Below, piece by piece: positions 21,498-41,434 of a DNA stretch of 64,000 nucleotides. The notes beneath the pieces are model-generated. The model did not search any database, was not told where the DNA came from, and saw nothing but the letters and a program-made list of their open reading frames with translations. This stretch comes from Diplonema japonicum (taxonomy: Eukaryota > Protista > Euglenozoa: Diplonemea): NCBI GenBank assembly GCA_964019335.1, contig OZ025678.1, positions 496,001 to 560,000 of the forward strand. The letters run 5' to 3'. The first letter of the stretch is position 1. Each line of letters starts with the position of its first letter. The position numbers and the translations under genes were made by a program.

Positions 21498-22390
21498 AAA
21501 CTAGTTTTTTTTCCGATCACTTTGTCATATTCTGACAAAGTAGAAGCAACCAGAACAGTCAGTTGGGCGGAAGCCTGTCGAGAGCCTGTTTCATTTGTTA
21601 AACGGATCGATCTTGGCAGCAAGCGTCATCTTGCCTTTGGCATAAATCCAGAGGAAGGGCACTGGAAAGAATGAATGTGAATAGTTGGGGAAATGAATTC
21701 TGATTCCAGGTGGAAGGTGGCGGGCGAGAGTTTTTCACTTTACTGAGGGGAAAAAAAAAGAGAGGGAGGGGGGTGTTTGTGCTGCAGTTACACGTTTTGC
21801 AAAAAGAAAAAAACCCCCCTTTTTTCCCCCTTATGTTTCGGTTGACAATCTAATTTTTATTGTCTTTCGCAACCCTACTTGTACAACCTCTACTTTTTTT
21901 TTTTAAAAAAAGGTTTTTCTTGTTTATTCAGGGCTATGGGGGAGAAAATAAATAATATACCAGTAGCCTTAGGGCTGATATCTCAAATTGGGGGGGGGGG
22001 GGGGGGGGGGAGTTTGTATAATCGCAGTTGCTCTTCTTATTTATGCGAGTATCCCCTCCCTTTTTTTTTAAAAGATCCGAGACACCTATTAGGTTATCTT
22101 TCCCTTGTTTCGTGCCAATTTATGTACCCGAGATAGGGAAAGAGACCGGTTTCGGTCCCAAAGGATCTAGGATCTTTCTTTTGATAAAAAGAGAAAAAAA
22201 AGAAATATTTTTGGCAATGTGCGGAACTACATGTCTCTCTGTGCGACCGCCTCTAGTAGTGACGGAACCCCATATTTCCCTTTAGCTTTAGTTTCTTTCA
22301 TTCTGCTCCGTTTTCTTTTGTTCCAATTTTTTCTTTTCCGGTGAGTACTGTGCTTCAGCCAAGAGCGCTTTGAGTCAGTTTTTTTTAGTT

Positions 22391-22406
22391 TTTCTGTACT
22401 TTATTG
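22391..22406 (+). other. Spliced-leader (mini-exon) 3'-end relic TTTCTGTACTTTATTG
   Basis: Matches, from my recall of the consensus, the conserved last 16 nt of the euglenozoan (Leishmania/Diplonema-type) SL exon. It lies at the 5' boundary of the LINE. Confidence 0.65.
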
Positions 22407-23611
22407 GTGTCCGACCGTGCCAATAAAGTCAATAGGTAATACGGTTTGTAAAGAAAGAAAATTGAAAGAAGTTGAGAAAGCAGATCGCAGAAAAGAGAGC
22501 TAAAAGAGGGTAAAAGAAGACATTGAAGTTGACAAGAAGTGAAAAAAAAAAAAAAAAGGAAGCAGAGGACAGCACGAGCAGCATGGAGAGACTGCGGGCG
22601 GGGTTACGCGGGTACGGCCTGGGGCTGGAGGGAGGAGCCGGGAGCTGTACGCGGTGGCGGGGTCGAAGCGACACCGGAGGTCAAACCTACAGCGGGGGTA
22701 GAGAGGCTAAGGCAGGAAAACGCCCGACTGGAGAGGGAAGTCCAGAAAATGGCGGCGCAAATGGACATGATGTCCAAACAGATCGGGGGACTGATGAAGC
22801 AGGTTGAGAGCGGGCCGGCTCCCCTTGGACAGACCTTCGCACAGAAAATAGCCCAAGGAAAGGAACAAACTTTTGACTTTACAGATGATGACGACGACTT
22901 GGGACCCCCACCAACAGAAGAAAACGAGGAAATGGAACGAGAACCAGAGGGAGAGGACGAGGATAAAGATTGCGATTGGAGAATCTGCAAGGCGACCGGG
23001 AGCTCACACGTTTTCAACAATGTGTTCCATCACTGGGACGCGGGATGCAGTGTTTGTGGGGAGGCCCTCACGAAGAAGAGACAAGGTGTAAGGTGCCTCC
23101 AGCAGGATTGTATGGTGTGTGTTTGCCGAGCGCGCGAAGTGACATGAAGTGAACGAGACCCCCACTCACGCGCCAATCCCCACCCCTCATCATCATCAAA
23201 ATCGATATCATCAGTAACATCATCATCATCATCATCATCAACATCACTTGAACCATCGAAATATGACCCTAAAGGGTTAGCCGAAAAGAAATTCGAGCGA
23301 CTGGTCGTGGATGGGATAGAGCCAAACCCGGGACCCATCGTGCCCCGCCCGCCAACGGGGAATAGCTTCACGATCCTAACACATAATGGATCGTCATTGA
23401 ACAACCGTCTCGGAGAGTACGCGGGTGTCCTCCCGGATGTGTTCTGCATGCAGGAGACGGCACTCACGGCGCAAACGCAGTTGGAAATAGAACGAGAGAG
23501 GACGAGTGGGGGAAGCAGTACGAAAGGCTGTGGAGCAAACCGCAACCGGGGAGGAGGTCCAAGGGAGTCACCTCGCTGACCATAGCAGAACGAGGAGGGC
23601 TGGGAACACTG

Positions 23612-25579
23612 GTGAAGAAGCCGAGGACAGCAGTTCGATGTGAAACGAGCGGACCGCACAAAGAGCGGTGGACGCACGTCAAGGTGTCGCTAGACGCTGA
23701 CAAACGCTGGCTCCACATAGTGAACGTCTACTGCCACTCCGGCCAGGACCCCATCAAGAAGGGAAAGCGAGAGGAACTCCTGAACTACATACTGCACCGC
23801 CTGAGGTTTGAGCTTGGGAACGTGCCAGTGGCGGTGGTAACACCTATGAACACCCCAGTACTGAAGAAAGCTCTGCAGACGGATTGGATTGACGCCGCGG
23901 ACTTCTGTGCGAGGCGGGAAGGGACACCACTGGAGGACACCTTCGTGAAGACCAACAGTGGGACAAGGATTGACAGGATCTTGTTGAACACGGTGGCAGC
24001 GCAGGGCCTCAGACACTGTAGGGTGGACGGCTCAATCCTGGGCTCAGATCACCGCTGCTTGGCAGTCACCCTCGACGTCCCGGCCTTCCACCAGGAAGTC
24101 CTGAGATATGTGGTGCCGCAGGAGATCCCGAAGACAAAGAAAGCGCCTGCTGCGGCGGCAAACCTGGTGCAGGAGTCGAGATACAAGGAGTACATCGCAG
24201 CAAAGAAGCCGACAGAAGCGCTGACTGAAATCTCGAACATGGCGGAGACATACCTCTTACATGGGTACGAAGGACCATCACGAGGATCGTACACAGGGAG
24301 GGGAAACGTGCGGAGGCCAATACCCATGGAGCTAAGCGCGAGGTCGACGGGGGCGGCAGTCGGGGCTGCCCCCAACAGGCAGATACGGCTCGAAAAGCTC
24401 AAGAAGAAGATACGAGACAGGATATCGCGACTGCAGGAGGAAGGAGGCTGCGGAGTGATGTCGACAGAGACCCATAACTTGTTGAGGAACAGAAGGCACG
24501 TGACGGCCTGGATGAATAACAGCACCAAGCAAGGGACACAAACAGTGGATGCAGCTGACGGAGGAGTGACGGCCAACCTGAAGATGGACAAAGTGATGCG
24601 GACGGCGTGGTCGGACATCTTCTGCGCACGAACACCAGAAGACGAGCCGCAGTTCGACGAGTTCCAGAGACGGTACGGTGAGCACATCAAGAGCAACCCG
24701 ATGGCACACGCCCCCATCGACGCCAAGCTGCTGAAGGAGGTGATCGGTAAGAAAGCGGACAAGGGGGCATGCGGCGTGGACGGCTGGCGGATTGGTGAGT
24801 TGAAACGCCTGTCGATCCTGCAAGCGGCGGACCTCTTCAACTTGATAGAGGAGACGGGCGAATGGCCGATGCAGGTCACGACGGCACTCGTATCCCTCAT
24901 CCCAAAGGGGGAAGGAACGGCACCAGCTGGCACTGGTGGAGGACGAGCCGCTAGAAGGACTTGCATTGGACTTCAGGAAGTGCTTCGATCTGGTCCCGCA
25001 ACAATTGTCGCACGAACTGATGCTGCCCTGGGACTAGACCCAGCAATCGCACGAGCACTCCAAGGAATGTACGGGCAGATCTCGAGGAGATTCAAGTTCC
25101 CCATAGGAATAGGGGCCACCTTTGAAGCAACGAATGGGATACTCCAGGGGTGCCCGCTGTCGGTGATCATAATAAACGCCTTACTGGCTGTGATGATCAG
25201 GACAATCGAGAAGGAAGCACCTGGAACGGAGGTTCTGTCCTATGCAGATGACACGTACCTTCTGGCAGAGTTGGAGAAGACCTTGCAGGCTGCGGTAAAC
25301 GGAACTTTGGAGTTCTGCGGACTCACTGGGATGAAGCTTAACCCGGAGAAAACGGTAGCGTTTGGCACGAAGAAGGACTTCCGGTCAAAAGTACTGGGTG
25401 ATAGGACAGTAACACAGAAAGGGAGAGAGGTCGCAGTCCCCTATAGAACAGTGACGTCGTTCAAGGCACTGGGCGTGATGGTGTTCACGAACAGGACAGG
25501 AACGACGTGGAACAAGCCAGCGACGGAAGCGGCCAATACGGCTCACAGAGGACCCCCTTGGGACCGGTGGGGAATCTGA
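23612..25579 (+). pseudogene. APE-RT polyprotein remnant of the LINE
   Basis: Largest surviving ORF. It contains the APE C-terminal half and RT motifs QG/YADD, and is broken by frameshifts and deletions. Confidence 0.88.
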
Positions 25580-26492
25580 TATGCAGGTGGATGCCGAGAA
25601 TCGGATGGGACTGGGAGAAGATGGAAATAGCCACAGAACTTGAGTGGCCCAAACGAGGAAGCGCCTTCAGGGCGGCTGTAAGGGCAGACAGGAGTGCGAC
25701 ACTAGTAGCGGAACGGAAGACGGTCATCGGACTCGGGGAAGGAGCAGACTACAAAACGAATGACCTCTGGAGGACAGCTAAAGATCGCCATCTAGCTTTC
25801 TGTATCAAGAGGGTAATTGCGGGAGGGATCCCCTACCTGAGTCCGTATGCCAAAGCAGGACCAAAGTGTGTACCCCCCACGAATGAGGACGACGAGTCCG
25901 AGGGACGGAGCGAAGAAGAGGAAGATCAAGACGAGCCAGCGGCGCATGAAGGACAAGACGAGTCGGGATTTGAATGTGACCTCTGCCCGACCAAGCATGC
26001 GGACACAGTAACACTGCTACGCCACCAGCTGTACGAGTGTCCGCCAGCACGAGAGGAGCTGATGCGGGAGGAAGGCAGAATCAAGCTGTTGGTGGAAAGA
26101 GCCAACGCAGTGTGCAGAACGAGACGGATAAGACGCCCCTTCCCTGCGGACGGGGCAAAGAGGGTCAAGTCGCTCACAGCGATCGGAGGCAAGGCTGCAA
26201 TAGGCTTTAACAGGAGACCGATCTTCGCATCAAGACAGACAGCGCAAAAGCTACAGTTGAAAGGGACATACAAGAAAGAACGCGTGTCTACGAAAAGCTT
26301 TAAAGGCGACAATAGGAACGAAGGCTATGCTCCAGAAGGGGAGCATTAATAGATAGGAACTCACACCACAAGAGGCTGTCCTCAAGTGGGATTGTCTTTT
26401 ACTATGAGTTTTATTTTTATATTTACTTGGTTTTTTCTCATAGTCCAAGTGTTCTATGCGTTCTTTGTATTTGTAGTCAGTGTACACATGAG

Positions 26493-37589: not shown

Positions 37590-37675
37590 AGGGAACGACC
37601 CCAAAAGGGGAGCATCATAGGTAGGCACGCCACCGCGGCGGGCCGTTGCTAACCACTTCGTTCCTATCATAGTGA
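37590..37675 (+). mobile_element. Severely 5'-truncated LINE 3' end with 7-bp TSD
   Basis: Nearly identical to 39667-39750. Flanked by ATTTATT at 37583-37589 and 37676-37682. Confidence 0.8.
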
Positions 37676-38107
37676 ATTTATTTTTTTTTAATAACCGCTC
37701 TTTCTTTTGCTGGGCCATCTTTTTATTCTTGAGCAAATACCATCTCAAGAAAGAAAGAAGAAGTGCATGACCAACTTGTTCGGATGAGAACAAGGGGGGC
37801 ACGTCTCACAAAAACTTCCTTTAAGTAACTCATATGTTGTGTAAAACAGGGGGATCGCATTTGGCTTCGGCAAAATAAAAGGATGCCCCCCCTCCCCCCC
37901 CTACCGCGAGGAAACGGGCGCCATGTCTGAAAGGTGATGCCGCACAGGTTAGAACTCACTCCAATGTATCGTTTGACTACAAACACCCCCACCCCTTGTA
38001 CTTTATGGTACACTTGGAGCGTTGTTCGATTTGTCACTTTGGCGTTAAAAGATCAAATTTTGCTTCCCTGTTCGTATATTTTGTTTCTCTGAGTAAACTT
38101 ATTTTCG

Positions 38108-39328
38108 ATGTTTTACAATAATCACACGCATCAAAGTACGATGTTTGTGCGAAGGGTGAGCACTGCACTCGCGAACTGCGAAGATGATGAAGCTGCGGCA
38201 TCTGCTTTCGACATGTTAACAGTCGACGAGAGGCAAGGGGACGCAGCGAGGATAATATTTGGGGTAAAAAAGAGTACCGATGTGGTGCTTAAGGACGTGC
38301 GTGCCTGGTCGAGCAAGGTACTGGCGGTGATACGAGATATGAACAAGACACTCTCCCAGATCTCTCTGAATGACGAGTTCGACGACCTGATCGGCCGCAG
38401 ATTAGAAGCTTATCGTGAAGCAGTTGAAAAGATTGAGTCTGCGGACAAGGCATCCCGAGGCACGTACATGGACGCATTGAAACAACTCGCCTTGCTTCAC
38501 TCGCGCAGCGGCATCATCGTGGTCGGAGAGAGGTACAGAGAATCCTTTGAACACACATCTATCATTCCGAGCGACATTCCCAGCGAAATTGTTGATGGTG
38601 ACAGGTGTTTTAACTTTGTTGTGCAAGAGGAACCTCAAGGTTCAGGAACCTTCCACCGTGCCAGTGGGGAAGCAGCTTGCATCTACAAATCATTTTCACG
38701 AACAAAGAACTGTACCCTGACGGTGAAATCCCACAGCAAGGAGCACTGCGAAACAACATGTTCATGCAAATACCTAATACGTGTGCTGGACGAGGAATGC
38801 CCACCCGGACAGGAGGACACCTCGATGCTTCTGCAATGGTGTCATACAAACCAGTTGGCGACTTCTTTCAAGCAAGCGATGCTGTACTTCATACAAGTAA
38901 CAATGGCAGTGAGCGTGGCGCACAAGACTGGTTTGGAACAAAACACCCAAACCGATAGTGTGATGCTTGTCGACTCCTGCGAGAATGTGATGTGCGGTGA
39001 CATGGAAACAGCATATACTGAAGCCCAGCAGCTCATCGTGCTCTTAAAGTGTCTCACAGCTCATTGCAGTGACATAGACAAGGGGGAGAGAGACGATGTG
39101 AGGGATCTGCTGGCCGACATGGAAGGCATGTCCAGCAGCAGCGTCATGAAGCATGCTGTGGTGCAGAAGTACTTGCATCTCGTCACGTGCCCGACCTTCC
39201 CGACCCCTTCCGAAGGTTCAAAACCAGCTGACACACAACGTGTTGCTGCAGCACCGGCCCTGAGTCTTACAGCCTTCGTCCGGCAGATCATACTCTCATC
39301 ATGGGGGTACCAGTACGTGAAAGCATAG
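38108..39328 (+). CDS. Hypothetical protein with a degenerate protein-kinase-like C-terminal half
   Basis: Long intronless ORF. QGSGTF, LLQWC, YFIQVTMAVSVAH..G and VMLVD...VMCGD echo kinase subdomains, but the HRD and DFG residues are absent. Confidence 0.5.
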   Translation: MFYNNHTHQSTMFVRRVSTALANCEDDEAAASAFDMLTVDERQGDAARIIFGVKKSTDVVLKDVRAWSSKVLAVIRDMNKTLSQISLNDEFDDLIGRRLEAYREAVEKIESADKASRGTYMDALKQLALLHSRSGIIVVGERYRESFEHTSIIPSDIPSEIVDGDRCFNFVVQEEPQGSGTFHRASGEAACIYKSFSRTKNCTLTVKSHSKEHCETTCSCKYLIRVLDEECPPGQEDTSMLLQWCHTNQLATSFKQAMLYFIQVTMAVSVAHKTGLEQNTQTDSVMLVDSCENVMCGDMETAYTEAQQLIVLLKCLTAHCSDIDKGERDDVRDLLADMEGMSSSSVMKHAVVQKYLHLVTCPTFPTPSEGSKPADTQRVAAAPALSLTAFVRQIILSSWGYQYVKA

Positions 39329-39353
39329 CCGGTAATCCTCCACTGATTTTTTT

Positions 39354-39750
39354 CGGATGCACCCCATCCCGATTTGGGAAGTTAAGCACCAGCAGGCCAG
39401 GTTAGTACTGCGGTGAGTGATCACGTGGGAAGCCCCAGTGCTGTATCCTCCAAACTTTTAAGAGGAGACGCGCTTTTCCGGCGCAGTCATGCAAGAACGT
39501 GAGATCACTACGATCCATTGGCCGCGACCACGTCGTTGGCTTTGATAGGAGGGCCCTGTTTGCATCGGGGCTGACGGCGACCAAGCTGAAAGGACTGAGA
39601 GAAAAGATTACCGAAAGGAAAGGATTAGAAGATATAAACGACACGCTAGGCACTACGGTGGGTAGCAGGGAACGACCCCAAAAGGGGAGCATAAGGTAGG
39701 CACGCCACCACGGCGGGCCGTTGCTAACCACTTCGTTCCTACCATAGTGA
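39354..39750 (+). mobile_element. 5S rRNA-LINE 3'-end chimeric retrocopy (or truncated SINE3)
   Basis: 5S fragment, then ccaaactttt, then ~290 nt encoding RRRAFPA..VRSLRSIG....GFDRRALFAS..TATKL, which is homologous to the C-terminus of the 22-26 kb LINE. T-runs lie on both flanks. Confidence 0.8.
39355..39449 (+). pseudogene. 5'-truncated 5S rRNA copy
   Basis: gcaccccatcccg..tgggaagttaagc..ggcc.ggttagtactgcggtg.gtga.cacgtgggaa.cccc.gtgctgtatcct matches eukaryotic 5S (A box, intermediate element, C box). About 20 nt are missing from the 5' end, and there is a small internal deletion. Confidence 0.88.
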
Positions 39751-40120
39751 TTTTTTTTTTTTTTTTTTTTCAGAGCAGAAATTAGTGATTTCTGCTTCCG
39801 TTTTTTGAACGTTTCCTTAGAAGCTAATTAAGTTGCAGTTTCAGAAATTAAAAAAAGAAAGAAAGAAAGGGGGGTTTTGGAATGGGGGAAGAAAAAGCAT
39901 GTGGCACGAAAACATTGAAAGAATGTTGGAGGAAGGTTGTTTCACAAACCTCGTGGCCAAAAAGAAAAATACTTCTCTCGTCCTTTAAGAACTGCGAATT
40001 TCTCTACTAATTATTTTTATTATGTTCTCGCCAGATACTGTCTATCTCACGAACCAGACAGCAACTGCAGCACCGTGACCTTGACTGTGACCGATAAGCG
40101 TGAATTGCTAACGTTAGGCA

Positions 40121-40219
40121 CCCGCCGGCACACCGCAAATTTATCAAAAAAATACTTTTTCGCTAAGTGTCCCGAAAGAAAAGGTTTTTTTTTGATAAAG
40201 CTTCGGTGTGCGGGGTGGG
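40121..40219. repeat. Long imperfect hairpin (palindromic element)
   Basis: Arms gcacaccg/cggtgtgc and tttatcaaaaaaa/tttttttgataaa. Confidence 0.55.
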
Positions 40220-40458
40220 CTCACCGGGGAAAAAAAAAAAAAGGAAATGGATGATATCAAACCTCATCCAGCTATGGCTTCGATTTTACTTACTTTTTTT
40301 AATTTTATTTTTTCATTTTTTTTTTTTGTGAAAAGAAATGTCGCCACATACACGGAAAGGGAAAAAAAAAAAAAAAAAAAGAAAAAAAGAAAAAAAAGGG
40401 GGGGAAAACGCCCACCAGCGGGAGAACAAAAAAAAGAAAAAAAGGGGGGTAAAAAAAA

Positions 40459-41434
40459 ATGAAACTGTTAGACATCGACGAGTTCGCCTACCTAAATGGC
40501 ATACTGGATAAGATACAAGGCGCGGGGATGACGGTGGTGGGGAGGGTCGAGGCGTATAGCTGTAAGAGGGTAACACAGGACAAAAGACTTGCTAGGAAGA
40601 TACAAGACTTGCAGGAGAAAGCATGCTTATCCCCACAGTGCGTGGGTCCTCTGGACGCAACCATGGTGGAAGCCGACGAGGAAGGGGATTTTTGTTTAGG
40701 AGCACCACTGGCAGTACCTAGCTATTCCGCAGGCTCTACTGAATGCCTCTTGGACCCCGAGTCAGCAGAGGACAGGGACGCTTTGGTGAACCTGGTAGGG
40801 ACCCTGAATGTCTCTTTTTCCGACTACGATTTTACGTATGAGTTTTGCTGTTTCCTTTTTTAACCCCCCTCACAGTGATGTCCCAGCTTCGTACTTTTCA
40901 AAGGAAACACCTTCATCAGTGCATGCTTTGGTGTCAAGCAGATTAATGGGCACTGGGGAGGGTTTGGGGTCGGTAGGTGTGACGAATTTTGAAGCAATGC
41001 TGTGGAAGGAGATAGACCAGGTATGAGAGAGGGGAAGGTTTTTTTTTTTTTTTTTTTAAAAAAAAAAGGTGGTTGGGTTGAATGGTAGCGAATTCTACTC
41101 CTTTAACCCCCCTTCGTCCCGTTCGCCAATAGAGGCGTCGTGGTCACACTTCCTGTTTATTCAAAACAGGAGGGCGGAGGTTAATAAGTTGATCTTCTTG
41201 ACCCTCTCAGGCGTGGCGCCCGAGGATGAGGATATGCGCTCCATCGATGAGTTCCCTCCGTCCGCGAGCAACACTTACATGTTCACTGCCCCTACCTCCC
41301 CTCACGCCACCGCTAGCAACGGACGGGTGTCCAGTGTGAACTCTCTCCACAATCTTGATATTTCGTCTGATAATGAGGCATCCTTTCAACCTTCACAAGG
41401 GCAAGGGCAATTGCTATGCACTGTGGAACAGTAG
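40459..41434 (+). CDS. MAF1: Maf1, repressor of RNA polymerase III transcription (2 introns)
   Basis: MKLLD..GRVEAYSCK...DKRL, LVGTLNVSFSDYDF, LWKEIDQVV and EFYSFNP. Introns 40836-40875 and 41021-41068. Confidence 0.92.

What the first reader, a model, noticed from the sequence alone, without database searches (positions are those of the whole stretch)
39354..39750. 5S rRNA fused to a LINE C-terminal/3' fragment inside one insertion
Seen: truncated 5S, then a ccaaacTTTT trailer, then LINE sequence. RRRAFPAQSCKNVRSLRSIGRDHVVGFDRRALFASGLTATKL aligns with RIRRPFPADGAKRVKSLTAIGGKAAIGFNRRPIFASRQTAQKL of the 26.1-26.3 kb LINE end. T7 lies on the left and a T-run on the right. Established: U6-L1 chimeras join a Pol III RNA's oligo-U end to a LINE 3' part, and SINE3 elements have 5S heads with LINE tails. 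Inference: the retained TTTT favours a pre-5S/LINE chimera or proto-SINE3; I know of no described case in euglenozoans.
Basis: partly seen in the sequence, partly recalled or inferred. Interest (0 to 1): 0.85.

Follow-up and report, generated by a model that had tools for sequence, protein, structure and literature searches.

The report
5S rRNA–LINE chimeric retrocopy, one of many
A dead, front-truncated copy of a 5S ribosomal RNA transcript is welded to the last 291 bases of a jumping gene (LINE), almost certainly pasted in as one piece; it is one of at least 16 such 5S-retroelement hybrids in this diplonemid genome, a known kind of accident that appears not to have been described in this group.

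Summary
Window 39357-39459 is a sense copy of this genome's own 5S rRNA, nt 23 to the 3' end, including the native trailer CCAAAC and TTTT (Rfam 44.6 bits; 93% identical to the genome's 5S genes). With no spacer, 39460-39750 is the last 291 nt of a young, abundant LINE ("LINE A", at least 600 candidate copies), followed by T20. T7 plus CGG lies on the left.

The junction is unique in the genome, so this is not a SINE3-like family. It is not an isolated case either. Of about 24 5S-like loci, only two are array genes (5S + T14, beside an SL RNA gene). At least 16 others are joined at the 5S 3' end, always in sense and with 0-6 T, to retroelement pieces. Four carry LINE A tails with four different breakpoints. 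The rest carry two other LINE tails, the intact 5' end of a full-length APE-RT-RNase H LINE, and two abundant SINE-like elements.

The best reading is recurrent template switching from retroelement RNA onto 3'-extended 5S transcripts during target-primed reverse transcription. The proto-SINE3 reading is rejected. I could not run an empty-site test.

Earlier agents of this scan reported single 5S chimeras elsewhere in this genome. It is a new member of a known kind.

The parts
39347..39353 (+). T7 run directly upstream of the insertion. It is the candidate target T-run and 5' copy of a short target-site duplication: TTTTTTTC at 39347-39354, compared with the last T's of the 3' run plus c at 39771.
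   Evidence: Sequence. About 15 of 21 simple 5'-truncated LINE A copies have a T-run at the same place, and L028 shows a clean duplication that begins with the T-run.
39354..39356 (+). CGG: three bases matching neither 5S nor an obvious flank. They are probably untemplated 5'-junction bases; the C may belong to the duplication.
   Evidence: Alignment to 5S genes. Similar G-rich extra bases occur at other 5' junctions (L003 GGGGGG, L075 GGG, L058 G, L029 G).
39357..39449 (+). 5'-truncated 5S rRNA body: nt 23 to the end of the Rfam model, with a 4-nt deletion and 3 substitutions relative to the genome's 5S genes.
   Evidence: Rfam RF00001 at 44.6 bits; 93-94% identity to 17 full-length 5S copies.
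39450..39459 (+). Native 5S 3' trailer CCAAAC plus TTTT (the start of the Pol III terminator). It marks a 3'-extended 5S transcript as the template.
   Evidence: The same trailer follows 5S in the array genes (CTCTAAAC+T14) and in other copies (CTCCAAACTTTT).
39460..39750 (+). Last 291 nt of LINE A: the final 78 codons of its ORF, the stop codon and the 3' UTR ending ...CATAGTGA. It is 5'-truncated at 39460.
   Evidence: At least 40 copies at 95-96% whose bodies continue upstream. It differs from the consensus of 29 copies by 4-5 substitutions and 4 indels. Protein homology to the RT-bearing LINE B in the window.
39751..39770 (+). T20 run that ends the insertion. This is the variable-length T-run found at the 3' end of every LINE A copy.
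38108..39328 (+). Upstream ORF (406 aa, no Pfam match). Its stop codon lies 18 nt before the T7, so the chimera sits in its 3' flank.
   Evidence: The flank is unique in the assembly.
37590..37692 (+). A separate, simple 5'-truncated LINE A tail (about 91-103 nt plus a T-rich run) with no small-RNA head. It is shown for comparison.
22391..26400 (+). LINE B, a paralogous LINE family. Boundaries are approximate.

Best explanation
The stretch 39354-39770 is one retrotransposition product: a bipartite chimeric retrocopy.

Proposed sequence of events (inferred):
1. LINE A's machinery nicked a T-run (A-run on the other strand) 18 nt downstream of a gene's stop codon.
2. It began target-primed reverse transcription at the 3' end of a LINE A RNA and copied 291 nt.
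3. It left that template and continued on the 3' end of a 5S rRNA transcript still carrying its trailer and U-tract, that is, a nascent or incompletely trimmed Pol III transcript.
4. It copied 5S back to nt 23, and the cDNA was joined to the upstream T-run with 2-3 extra bases.

The product is inert. The 5S part lacks 22 nt, carries a deletion, and is separated from the LINE tail by a Pol III terminator.

Shown here: the anatomy, the native 5S trailer, the LINE identity and truncation, the uniqueness of the junction, and the recurrence of such fusions with variable breakpoints.

Inferred: the single-event origin of this particular copy, and template switching (rather than RNA ligation) as the joining step.
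For: (1) The 5S piece is in sense, ends at its native trailer+TTTT, and abuts the LINE tail with no spacer.

(2) Four 5S-LINE A fusions have four LINE breakpoints: 291 nt (window), about 129 nt (C93), 40 nt (C28) and 37 nt (C60) from the LINE end. Their 5S 5' ends also differ: nt 23, 82, 50 and 1.

(3) At least 12 further 5S copies are fused in the same way to other retroelements.
- SINE-like X, five times. X has at least 1,435 candidate copies. The X parts are 88-97% alike among the fusions but 99% identical to solo copies.
- SINE-like Z, its last 41 nt, twice. Z has at least 633 candidates.
- Full-length LINE Y, two independent events. Its ORF2 is an intact 1,431-aa APE-RT-RNase H protein.
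- A 318-nt tail of another young LINE, a 52-nt tail of a family with at least 199 copies, and others.

(4) Only two 5S loci look like array genes: T14 terminator with an SL RNA gene beside it.

(5) The junctions carry 0-6 T. Eight have none, which rules out insertion into a terminator T-run for those.

(6) The composite is flanked by T-runs just as simple truncated LINE A insertions are (about 15 of 21). L028 shows that LINE A duplications begin with the T-run. A possible TTTTTTTC duplication brackets the whole composite.

(7) The divergence of the two halves is compatible: 2.9% versus about 1.5%, both with indels.

(8) The same architecture is established for U6/L1 and other chimeras in mammals and for MINE in Magnaporthe, including shared hot-spot breakpoints (10.1101/2025.02.02.635956; PMC2104539).
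Against: - No empty-site allele or orthologue could be examined, so one event versus two is not proven for this copy.
- The putative duplication is only a T-run plus one base.
- LINE A does insert into T-runs. One locus (L029) has a complete Z element, T16 and G, followed by LINE A truncated at the very same nucleotide as here. That can be read either as a hot spot for switching or as sequential insertion into a T-tail.
- Nothing here separates template switching from RNA ligation before reverse transcription.
- No RNA data show that 5S transcripts with this trailer exist.
- No pausing hairpin is predicted upstream of the breakpoint (z = -0.29).
Confidence: 0.8

Rival explanations
1. Two sequential insertions. 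Either a 5S retropseudogene ending in TTTT was already there and LINE A, which favours T-runs, later landed in its T-tract. Or a 5S-UUUU RNA was retro-copied into the T-run left at the 5' edge of an older LINE A fragment.
For: LINE A insertions are flanked by T-runs, and tails of older elements are reused as targets (L029, L025). The window junction does carry four T's. Simple LINE A fragments exist nearby (37590-37692).
Against: No 5S retrocopy with a plain T tail and no retroelement behind it was found among the ~24 loci. One diverged copy, C20 (L047), has neither a T-run nor a checked flank. Eight fusions have no T at the junction. Junction T-tracts are 0-6, whereas element tails and targets are T6-T34. 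Four exact 3'-end fusions to LINE A among ~24 loci is far above chance for about 600 tails in 62.5 Mb.
Confidence: 0.1
2. The chimera is a single event, but the two RNAs were joined before reverse transcription by an RNA ligase (as RtcB does for U6/L1) rather than by a template switch.
For: This mechanism has been demonstrated for human U6/L1 (PMC6789731, listed; discussed). It gives the same sense-sense architecture.
Against: That pathway uses a 2',3'-cyclic phosphate end, as on U6. A Pol III U-tract with 3'-OH is not such a substrate (general knowledge, not tested here). Fusions to the intact 5' ends of X and Y, with 0-2 extra bases, look like end-to-end template jumps.
Confidence: 0.07
3. 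A proto-SINE3: a 5S-headed, LINE-tailed element able to be transcribed by Pol III and amplified.
For: It has the head-tail layout of SINE3. The internal control region of 5S (roughly nt 50-97) is retained. Two 5S-Z fusions share one junction.
Against: The junction is unique. The first 22 nt of 5S are missing. TTTT would terminate Pol III before the tail. The copy is older than most LINE A copies and carries indels. 5S-X fusions arose independently.
Confidence: 0.02
4. Assembly artefact or chance adjacency.
For: None specific.
Against: Ten runs from three studies hold 59-86% of the sampled words of 38800-40400. The assembly matched by size is reported as HiFi-based (PMC13598402). The fusion is exact at the native ends of both partners and recurs at other loci.
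Confidence: 0.01

Closest known systems
Mammalian small-RNA/L1 chimeric retrocopies (U6/L1, U3/L1, 5S/L1)
   Same: The 5' part is a copy of a small nuclear or ribosomal RNA. The 3' part is a 5'-truncated LINE ending at the LINE's own 3' end. The two are fused directly, inserted by the LINE machinery, recurrent, and do not amplify further. Like U6/L1, the small RNA is in sense and keeps its U-tract.
   Different: Human 5S/L1 chimeras are mostly antisense with the 5S start at the junction. Here all of at least 16 are in sense and joined at the 5S 3' end. The LINEs here end in T-runs and sit in T-runs, not poly(A). The host is a diplonemid. Most dispersed 5S copies in the genome are such chimeras.
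MINE and related bipartite/tripartite chimeras of Magnaporthe grisea (WEIRD-MGL, WEIRD-MgSINE)
   Same: One abundant non-coding RNA is repeatedly fused to variable-length 3' parts of a LINE and to a SINE. Some breakpoints are shared by independent chimeras (PMC2104539). The parallel cases here are window and L029, and L058 and L071.
   Different: The captured RNA here is 5S rRNA with its Pol III trailer. Several LINE and SINE families take part. Clear 10-20 bp duplications are mostly masked by T-runs.
SINE3 and other 5S-derived SINEs (zebrafish, fruit bats)
   Same: A 5S-derived head followed by a LINE-derived tail.
   Different: Those are amplifying families with a fixed head-body junction, a complete promoter-bearing head and no internal terminator. 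This is a single, truncated, terminator-containing copy.
End-to-end template jumping by R2-type reverse transcriptases
   Same: It would explain 5S joined to the intact 5' ends of X and Y with 0-2 extra bases. This comparison rests on general knowledge and was not tested.
   Different: The window case is a switch from an internal position of the LINE RNA. No biochemical data exist for these enzymes.

Membership tests
LINE-mediated chimeric retrocopy (template-switch type) | The 5' part is a sense copy of a cellular RNA that ends at that RNA's native 3' end. | tested here: met
   5S nt 23-129 with native trailer CCAAAC+TTTT.
LINE-mediated chimeric retrocopy (template-switch type) | The 3' part is a 5'-truncated LINE that ends at the LINE's own 3' end, fused without a spacer. 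| tested here: met
   39460-39750 is the last 291 nt of LINE A, and other copies continue upstream.
LINE-mediated chimeric retrocopy (template-switch type) | Independent events with variable breakpoints in the same genome. | tested here: met
   Four LINE A fusions with four breakpoints and four 5S 5' ends, plus at least 12 fusions to other retroelements.
LINE-mediated chimeric retrocopy (template-switch type) | A target-site duplication brackets the whole composite. | tested here: inconclusive
   Only TTTTTTTC can be matched on both sides. T-runs mask duplications in this family. L028 shows the family's duplication starts with the T-run.
LINE-mediated chimeric retrocopy (template-switch type) | An empty site lacks both parts together. 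| not testable with these tools
   The flanks are unique in the assembly. No relatives are in the genome collection.
SINE3 / 5S-derived SINE | A multi-copy family sharing one head-body junction. | tested here: not met
   Only the window's own locus matches across the junction.
SINE3 / 5S-derived SINE | A complete 5S-derived head able to drive Pol III, with no terminator before the tail. | tested here: not met
   The head starts at nt 23, and TTTT lies at 39456-39459 between head and tail.
SINE3 / 5S-derived SINE | A LINE-derived 3' tail. | tested here: met
   LINE A tail.
Site-specific LINE insertion in 5S genes or arrays | The insertion lies within a 5S gene array or at a fixed position of functional 5S genes. 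| tested here: not met
   The flanks are single-copy gene-flank DNA. The array-type genes (5S+T14 beside SL RNA) lie on other contigs.
Functional 5S rRNA gene | A full-length 5S sequence with helix I. | tested here: not met
   Rfam model positions 14-109 only. The homologous part starts at nt 23 and carries a 4-nt deletion.
Non-LTR retrotransposon (LINE), for the 3' part | RT-encoding element with a constant 3' end and variable 5' truncation. | tested here: met
   Truncation series of 29 copies. The ORF is intact over the last 1.7 kb and homologous to LINE B, which carries RVT_1.

The most novel reading that the evidence does not exclude
The LINE and SINE families of this diplonemid end in T-runs and insert at T-runs. 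If their reverse transcriptases prime from A-runs on U-tailed RNA (a mirror image of L1 and poly(A)), then nascent Pol III transcripts, which naturally end in oligo(U), would be preferred co-templates. That would explain why nearly every dispersed 5S copy is a sense fusion retaining its trailer and U's. It would also make this genome a natural setting in which 5S-headed SINEs could arise; candidates are the 5S-X fusions (five) and the two 5S-Z41 fusions with one shared junction.
Probability: 0.25. Interest if true: 0.6.

Novelty: new member of a known kind. Interest (0 to 1): 0.4.

Why it matters
It extends LINE-driven RNA recombination, documented in mammals and one fungus, to a diplonemid (Euglenozoa). 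It also shows that in this genome the process is common enough to account for most dispersed 5S copies.

There are two practical consequences.
- Dispersed "5S genes" in annotations of this genome are mostly retro-chimeras. The real genes are those in the 5S/SL repeats.
- The fusions preserve the 3' ends of 5S transcripts and the 5' and 3' ends of several active retroelements. They therefore give a free map of those RNA ends and of the T-run target preference.

The individual copy in the window has no likely function.

Tried and rejected
- **Reads test for an empty site.** One local script used window 38001-41000 as a BLAST subject for the LINE A reference, and that slice spans those places. 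Nothing was aligned or read there.
- **Fetching more loci.** As a result I could not read LINE A's RT core, the flanks of the six U6 copies, or further junctions.
- **Paralogous or haplotig empty site.** Both flanks are unique.
- **Pausing hairpin upstream of the LINE A breakpoint.** None is predicted (z = -0.29).
- **Ribozyme or other Rfam family in element X or in 39200-39900.** Nothing was found beyond 5S.
- **L079 as a full-length LINE A.** It is a 1,060-bp truncated copy next to a piggyBac-like ORF.
- **Literature on T-tailed LINEs.** The search returned nothing relevant.
- **SINE3 family hypothesis.** Rejected; see the membership test.

Full report
**What is there**

Rfam finds one family in the 64-kb window: 5S_rRNA at 39348-39439 (+), 44.6 bits, model positions 14-109. 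A permissive scan of 39200-39900 gives the same hit.

Compared with the genome's own 5S genes, the homologous stretch is 39357-39459. That corresponds to nt 23-129 of a 129-nt gene+trailer reference, with three substitutions and a 4-nt deletion. The Rfam model ends at ...GTATCCT (39449). The next ten bases, CCAAAC+TTTT, are the native trailer:
- the array genes read CTCTAAAC followed by T14;
- six other copies read CTCCAAAC.

At 39460 the sequence switches, with no spacer, to the last 291 nt of a LINE that I call LINE A (39460-39750), followed by T20 (39751-39770). On the left are T7 (39347-39353) and CGG (39354-39356). The stop codon of a 406-aa ORF ends at 39328.

**The LINE part**

A whole-genome search gave 616 candidates. 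The 40 that were scored are 87-96% identical to the window copy, most of them 93-96%, and all but three begin their match exactly at 39460. In 26 of the 29 loci I inspected, the sequence upstream of that point is the same LINE body, so the window copy is 5'-truncated.

The 29 copies form a truncation series. Six or more extend beyond 1.8 kb. The others stop at 1,767 down to 296 nt from the 3' end.

An intact reading frame runs through the last 1.7 kb (L023). It is homologous to the C-terminal ORF of the LINE at 22.4-26.4 kb of the window ("LINE B"): 39% over 185 aa, E 4e-27. In several copies it is also homologous to the end of LINE B's RT ORF. LINE B carries RVT_1 and gives weak matches to R2 and L1 ORF2p reverse transcriptases.

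The other LINE A copies are 0-0.7% from their consensus. The window copy has 4-5 substitutions and four indels, so it is an older insertion of a recently active family.

**T-runs**

Every LINE A copy ends ...CATAGTGA(A) followed by a T-run of variable length (T5 to T34), not poly(A). About 15 of 21 simple truncated copies also have a T-run immediately upstream, sometimes with a few extra, mostly G, bases. L028 has a clean duplication, TTTTT+GCTTGAACAA, that begins with the T-run.

The window composite has the same bracket, T7 on the left and T20 on the right. At most an 8-nt duplication (TTTTTTTC) can be matched.

**Is the junction a family?**

No. Only the window's own locus matches across 5S and LINE.

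**Is it an isolated accident?**

No. The genome has about 24 5S-like loci.

Two of them (C15, C59) are array-type genes. They have 5S+T14 and, about 370 bp away on the other strand, an SL RNA gene whose exon ends ...CAGTTTCTGTACTTTATTG. This is the diplonemid 5S/SL arrangement described for D. papillatum (PMC10161547).

Nearly all the others are joined at the 5S 3' end, in sense and with 0-6 T, to repeated elements:

| Partner | Loci | Details |
|---|---|---|
| LINE A tail | window, C93, C28, C60 | Retained LINE length 291, about 129, 40 and 37 nt. 5S starts at nt 23, 82, 50 and 1. |
| X, a ~335-nt SINE-like element (at least 1,435 candidates) | C73, C91, C86, C24, C23 | Full-length 5S joined to X's intact 5' end. 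The junctions differ slightly. The X parts are 88-97% alike among the fusions but 99% identical to solo copies. |
| Z, a ~283-nt SINE-like element (at least 633 candidates) | C66, C35 | Last 41 nt of Z. |
| Y, a full-length LINE | C52 (5S nt 15-129); a duplicated locus on C61 (nt 76-124) | Y's intact 5' end. Its ORF2 is an intact 1,431-aa protein with Exo_endo_phos, RVT_1 and RNase_H domains. |
| Another young LINE | C52:246942 | 318-nt tail; at least 24 copies at 98-100%. |
| A LINE-like C-terminal coding tail | C55 | |
| A family with at least 199 copies | C84 | 52-nt tail. |
| A repeat with at least 397 copies | C7 | |

Several fused copies, both full-length and truncated, have T-runs directly upstream.

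**Interpretation**

This is the architecture of LINE-mediated chimeric retrocopies. It is established for U6/L1 and other small RNAs in mammals (10.1101/2025.02.02.635956; PMC4476161, listed) and for WEIRD-MGL/MgSINE in Magnaporthe (PMC2104539).

I therefore read the window element as one insertion. Reverse transcription began on LINE A RNA at a T-run target, left that template after 291 nt, and continued on a 5S transcript that still carried its trailer and U-tract.

Compared with the human cases:
- All the diplonemid fusions are sense fusions at the 5S 3' end, like U6/L1.
- Human 5S/L1 chimeras are mostly antisense.

Shared breakpoints parallel the hot spots reported in Magnaporthe:
- the window and L029 share one LINE A breakpoint;
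- C66 and C35 share one Z breakpoint.

No hairpin is predicted upstream of the LINE A site.

**What is not shown**

I could not test an empty site. The flanks have no second copy in the assembly, and there are no relatives in the genome collection.

A two-step origin therefore remains possible for this copy, because LINE A does land in T-runs, including the tails of older elements (L029, L025). I consider it much less likely for two reasons:
- I found no 5S retrocopy with a plain T tail and no retroelement behind it.
- Many junctions have no T at all.

Template switching versus prior RNA ligation (PMC6789731) cannot be separated with sequence alone.

**Organism**

Three things fit Diplonema japonicum YPF1604:
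- the diplonemid-type SL next to 5S;
- the assembly size, 62.5 Mb in 132 contigs;
- the published genome note, 62.30 Mb with 118 chromosome-scale scaffolds (PMC13598402).

Earlier scan notes used the same name. This is an inference, not a sequence-level identification.

Neither that genome note nor the D. papillatum genome paper describes such chimeras. My literature searches found none for euglenozoans.

**Earlier notes of this scan**

Other agents had reported single 5S-LINE or 5S-SINE retrocopies elsewhere in this genome, one of them as a "one-off". The census here shows that they belong to one recurrent process.

**Verdict**

This is a real feature and was correctly observed. It is a chimeric retrocopy of a known kind in a new lineage. 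It is not a SINE3 precursor, and the copy itself has no likely function.

Noticed in passing
L002-L030 (LINE A copies); window 26380-26440 (LINE B end); L058, L065, L029 (X and Z ends): At least four retroelement families here (LINE A, LINE B, SINE-like X and Z) end in T-runs of variable length rather than poly(A). They are preceded by T-runs when 5'-truncated. L028 has a duplication, TTTTT+GCTTGAACAA, that starts with the T-run. This suggests priming from an A-run on the nicked strand. I know of no described LINE with this habit, and the literature search was uninformative.
   Followed up: partly
L029 (G000:C91:332906-333505, minus strand): A complete Z element with T16 and one G is followed by LINE A truncated at exactly the same nucleotide as the window copy. 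This is either a Z-LINE A chimera at a switching hot spot or an insertion into Z's tail.
   Followed up: partly
L081 (G000:C52:168500-177000, minus strand): A full-length LINE (Y) has an ORF1 candidate and an intact 1,431-aa APE-RT-RNase H ORF2. A 5'-truncated 5S (nt 15-129 plus TTTT) is fused to its first base. Its 3' region looks A-rich, unlike LINE A.
   Followed up: partly
L076/L077 (G000:C85:29164-29267): The 3' part of 5S (nt 86-125), one A, then 5S nt 1-65, head to tail, followed by unrelated sequence. This may be a 5S-5S template jump with later loss of the rest.
   Followed up: no
window 22387-22429: The LINE B copy begins with the last ~19 nt of the spliced-leader exon (...TTTCTGTACTTTATTG GT), followed by an inverted copy of part of it. 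The sequence diverges from the SL RNA gene just after the splice-donor GT. This suggests a trans-spliced LINE transcript was retro-copied rather than SL RNA captured.
   Followed up: no
window 37590-37692: A second, simple LINE A tail fragment (about 91-103 nt plus a T-rich run) with no small-RNA head lies 0.4 kb upstream of the 406-aa ORF.
   Followed up: yes
G000:C31:607755-608781 (outside the window): The repeat that follows the 5S copy on C7 also occurs as a ~148-bp tandem array on the window's own contig.
   Followed up: no
G000: C52:445913, C8:559647, C51:53631, C51:301952, C109:9913, C109:30209: There are six full-length U6 matches on four contigs.
   Followed up: no
L054 (G000:C17:472899) and L072 (G000:C73:197047): The two 5S copies share a repeated upstream flank. 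The full-length one is fused via TTTT to a tRNA-like sequence (GGGCTAG...GGTCGATTCCC) that Rfam does not call at gathering score.
   Followed up: no
window 40053-40150: Weak similarity (71-75%) to a dispersed repeat with at least 40 copies, just downstream of the insertion.
   Followed up: no
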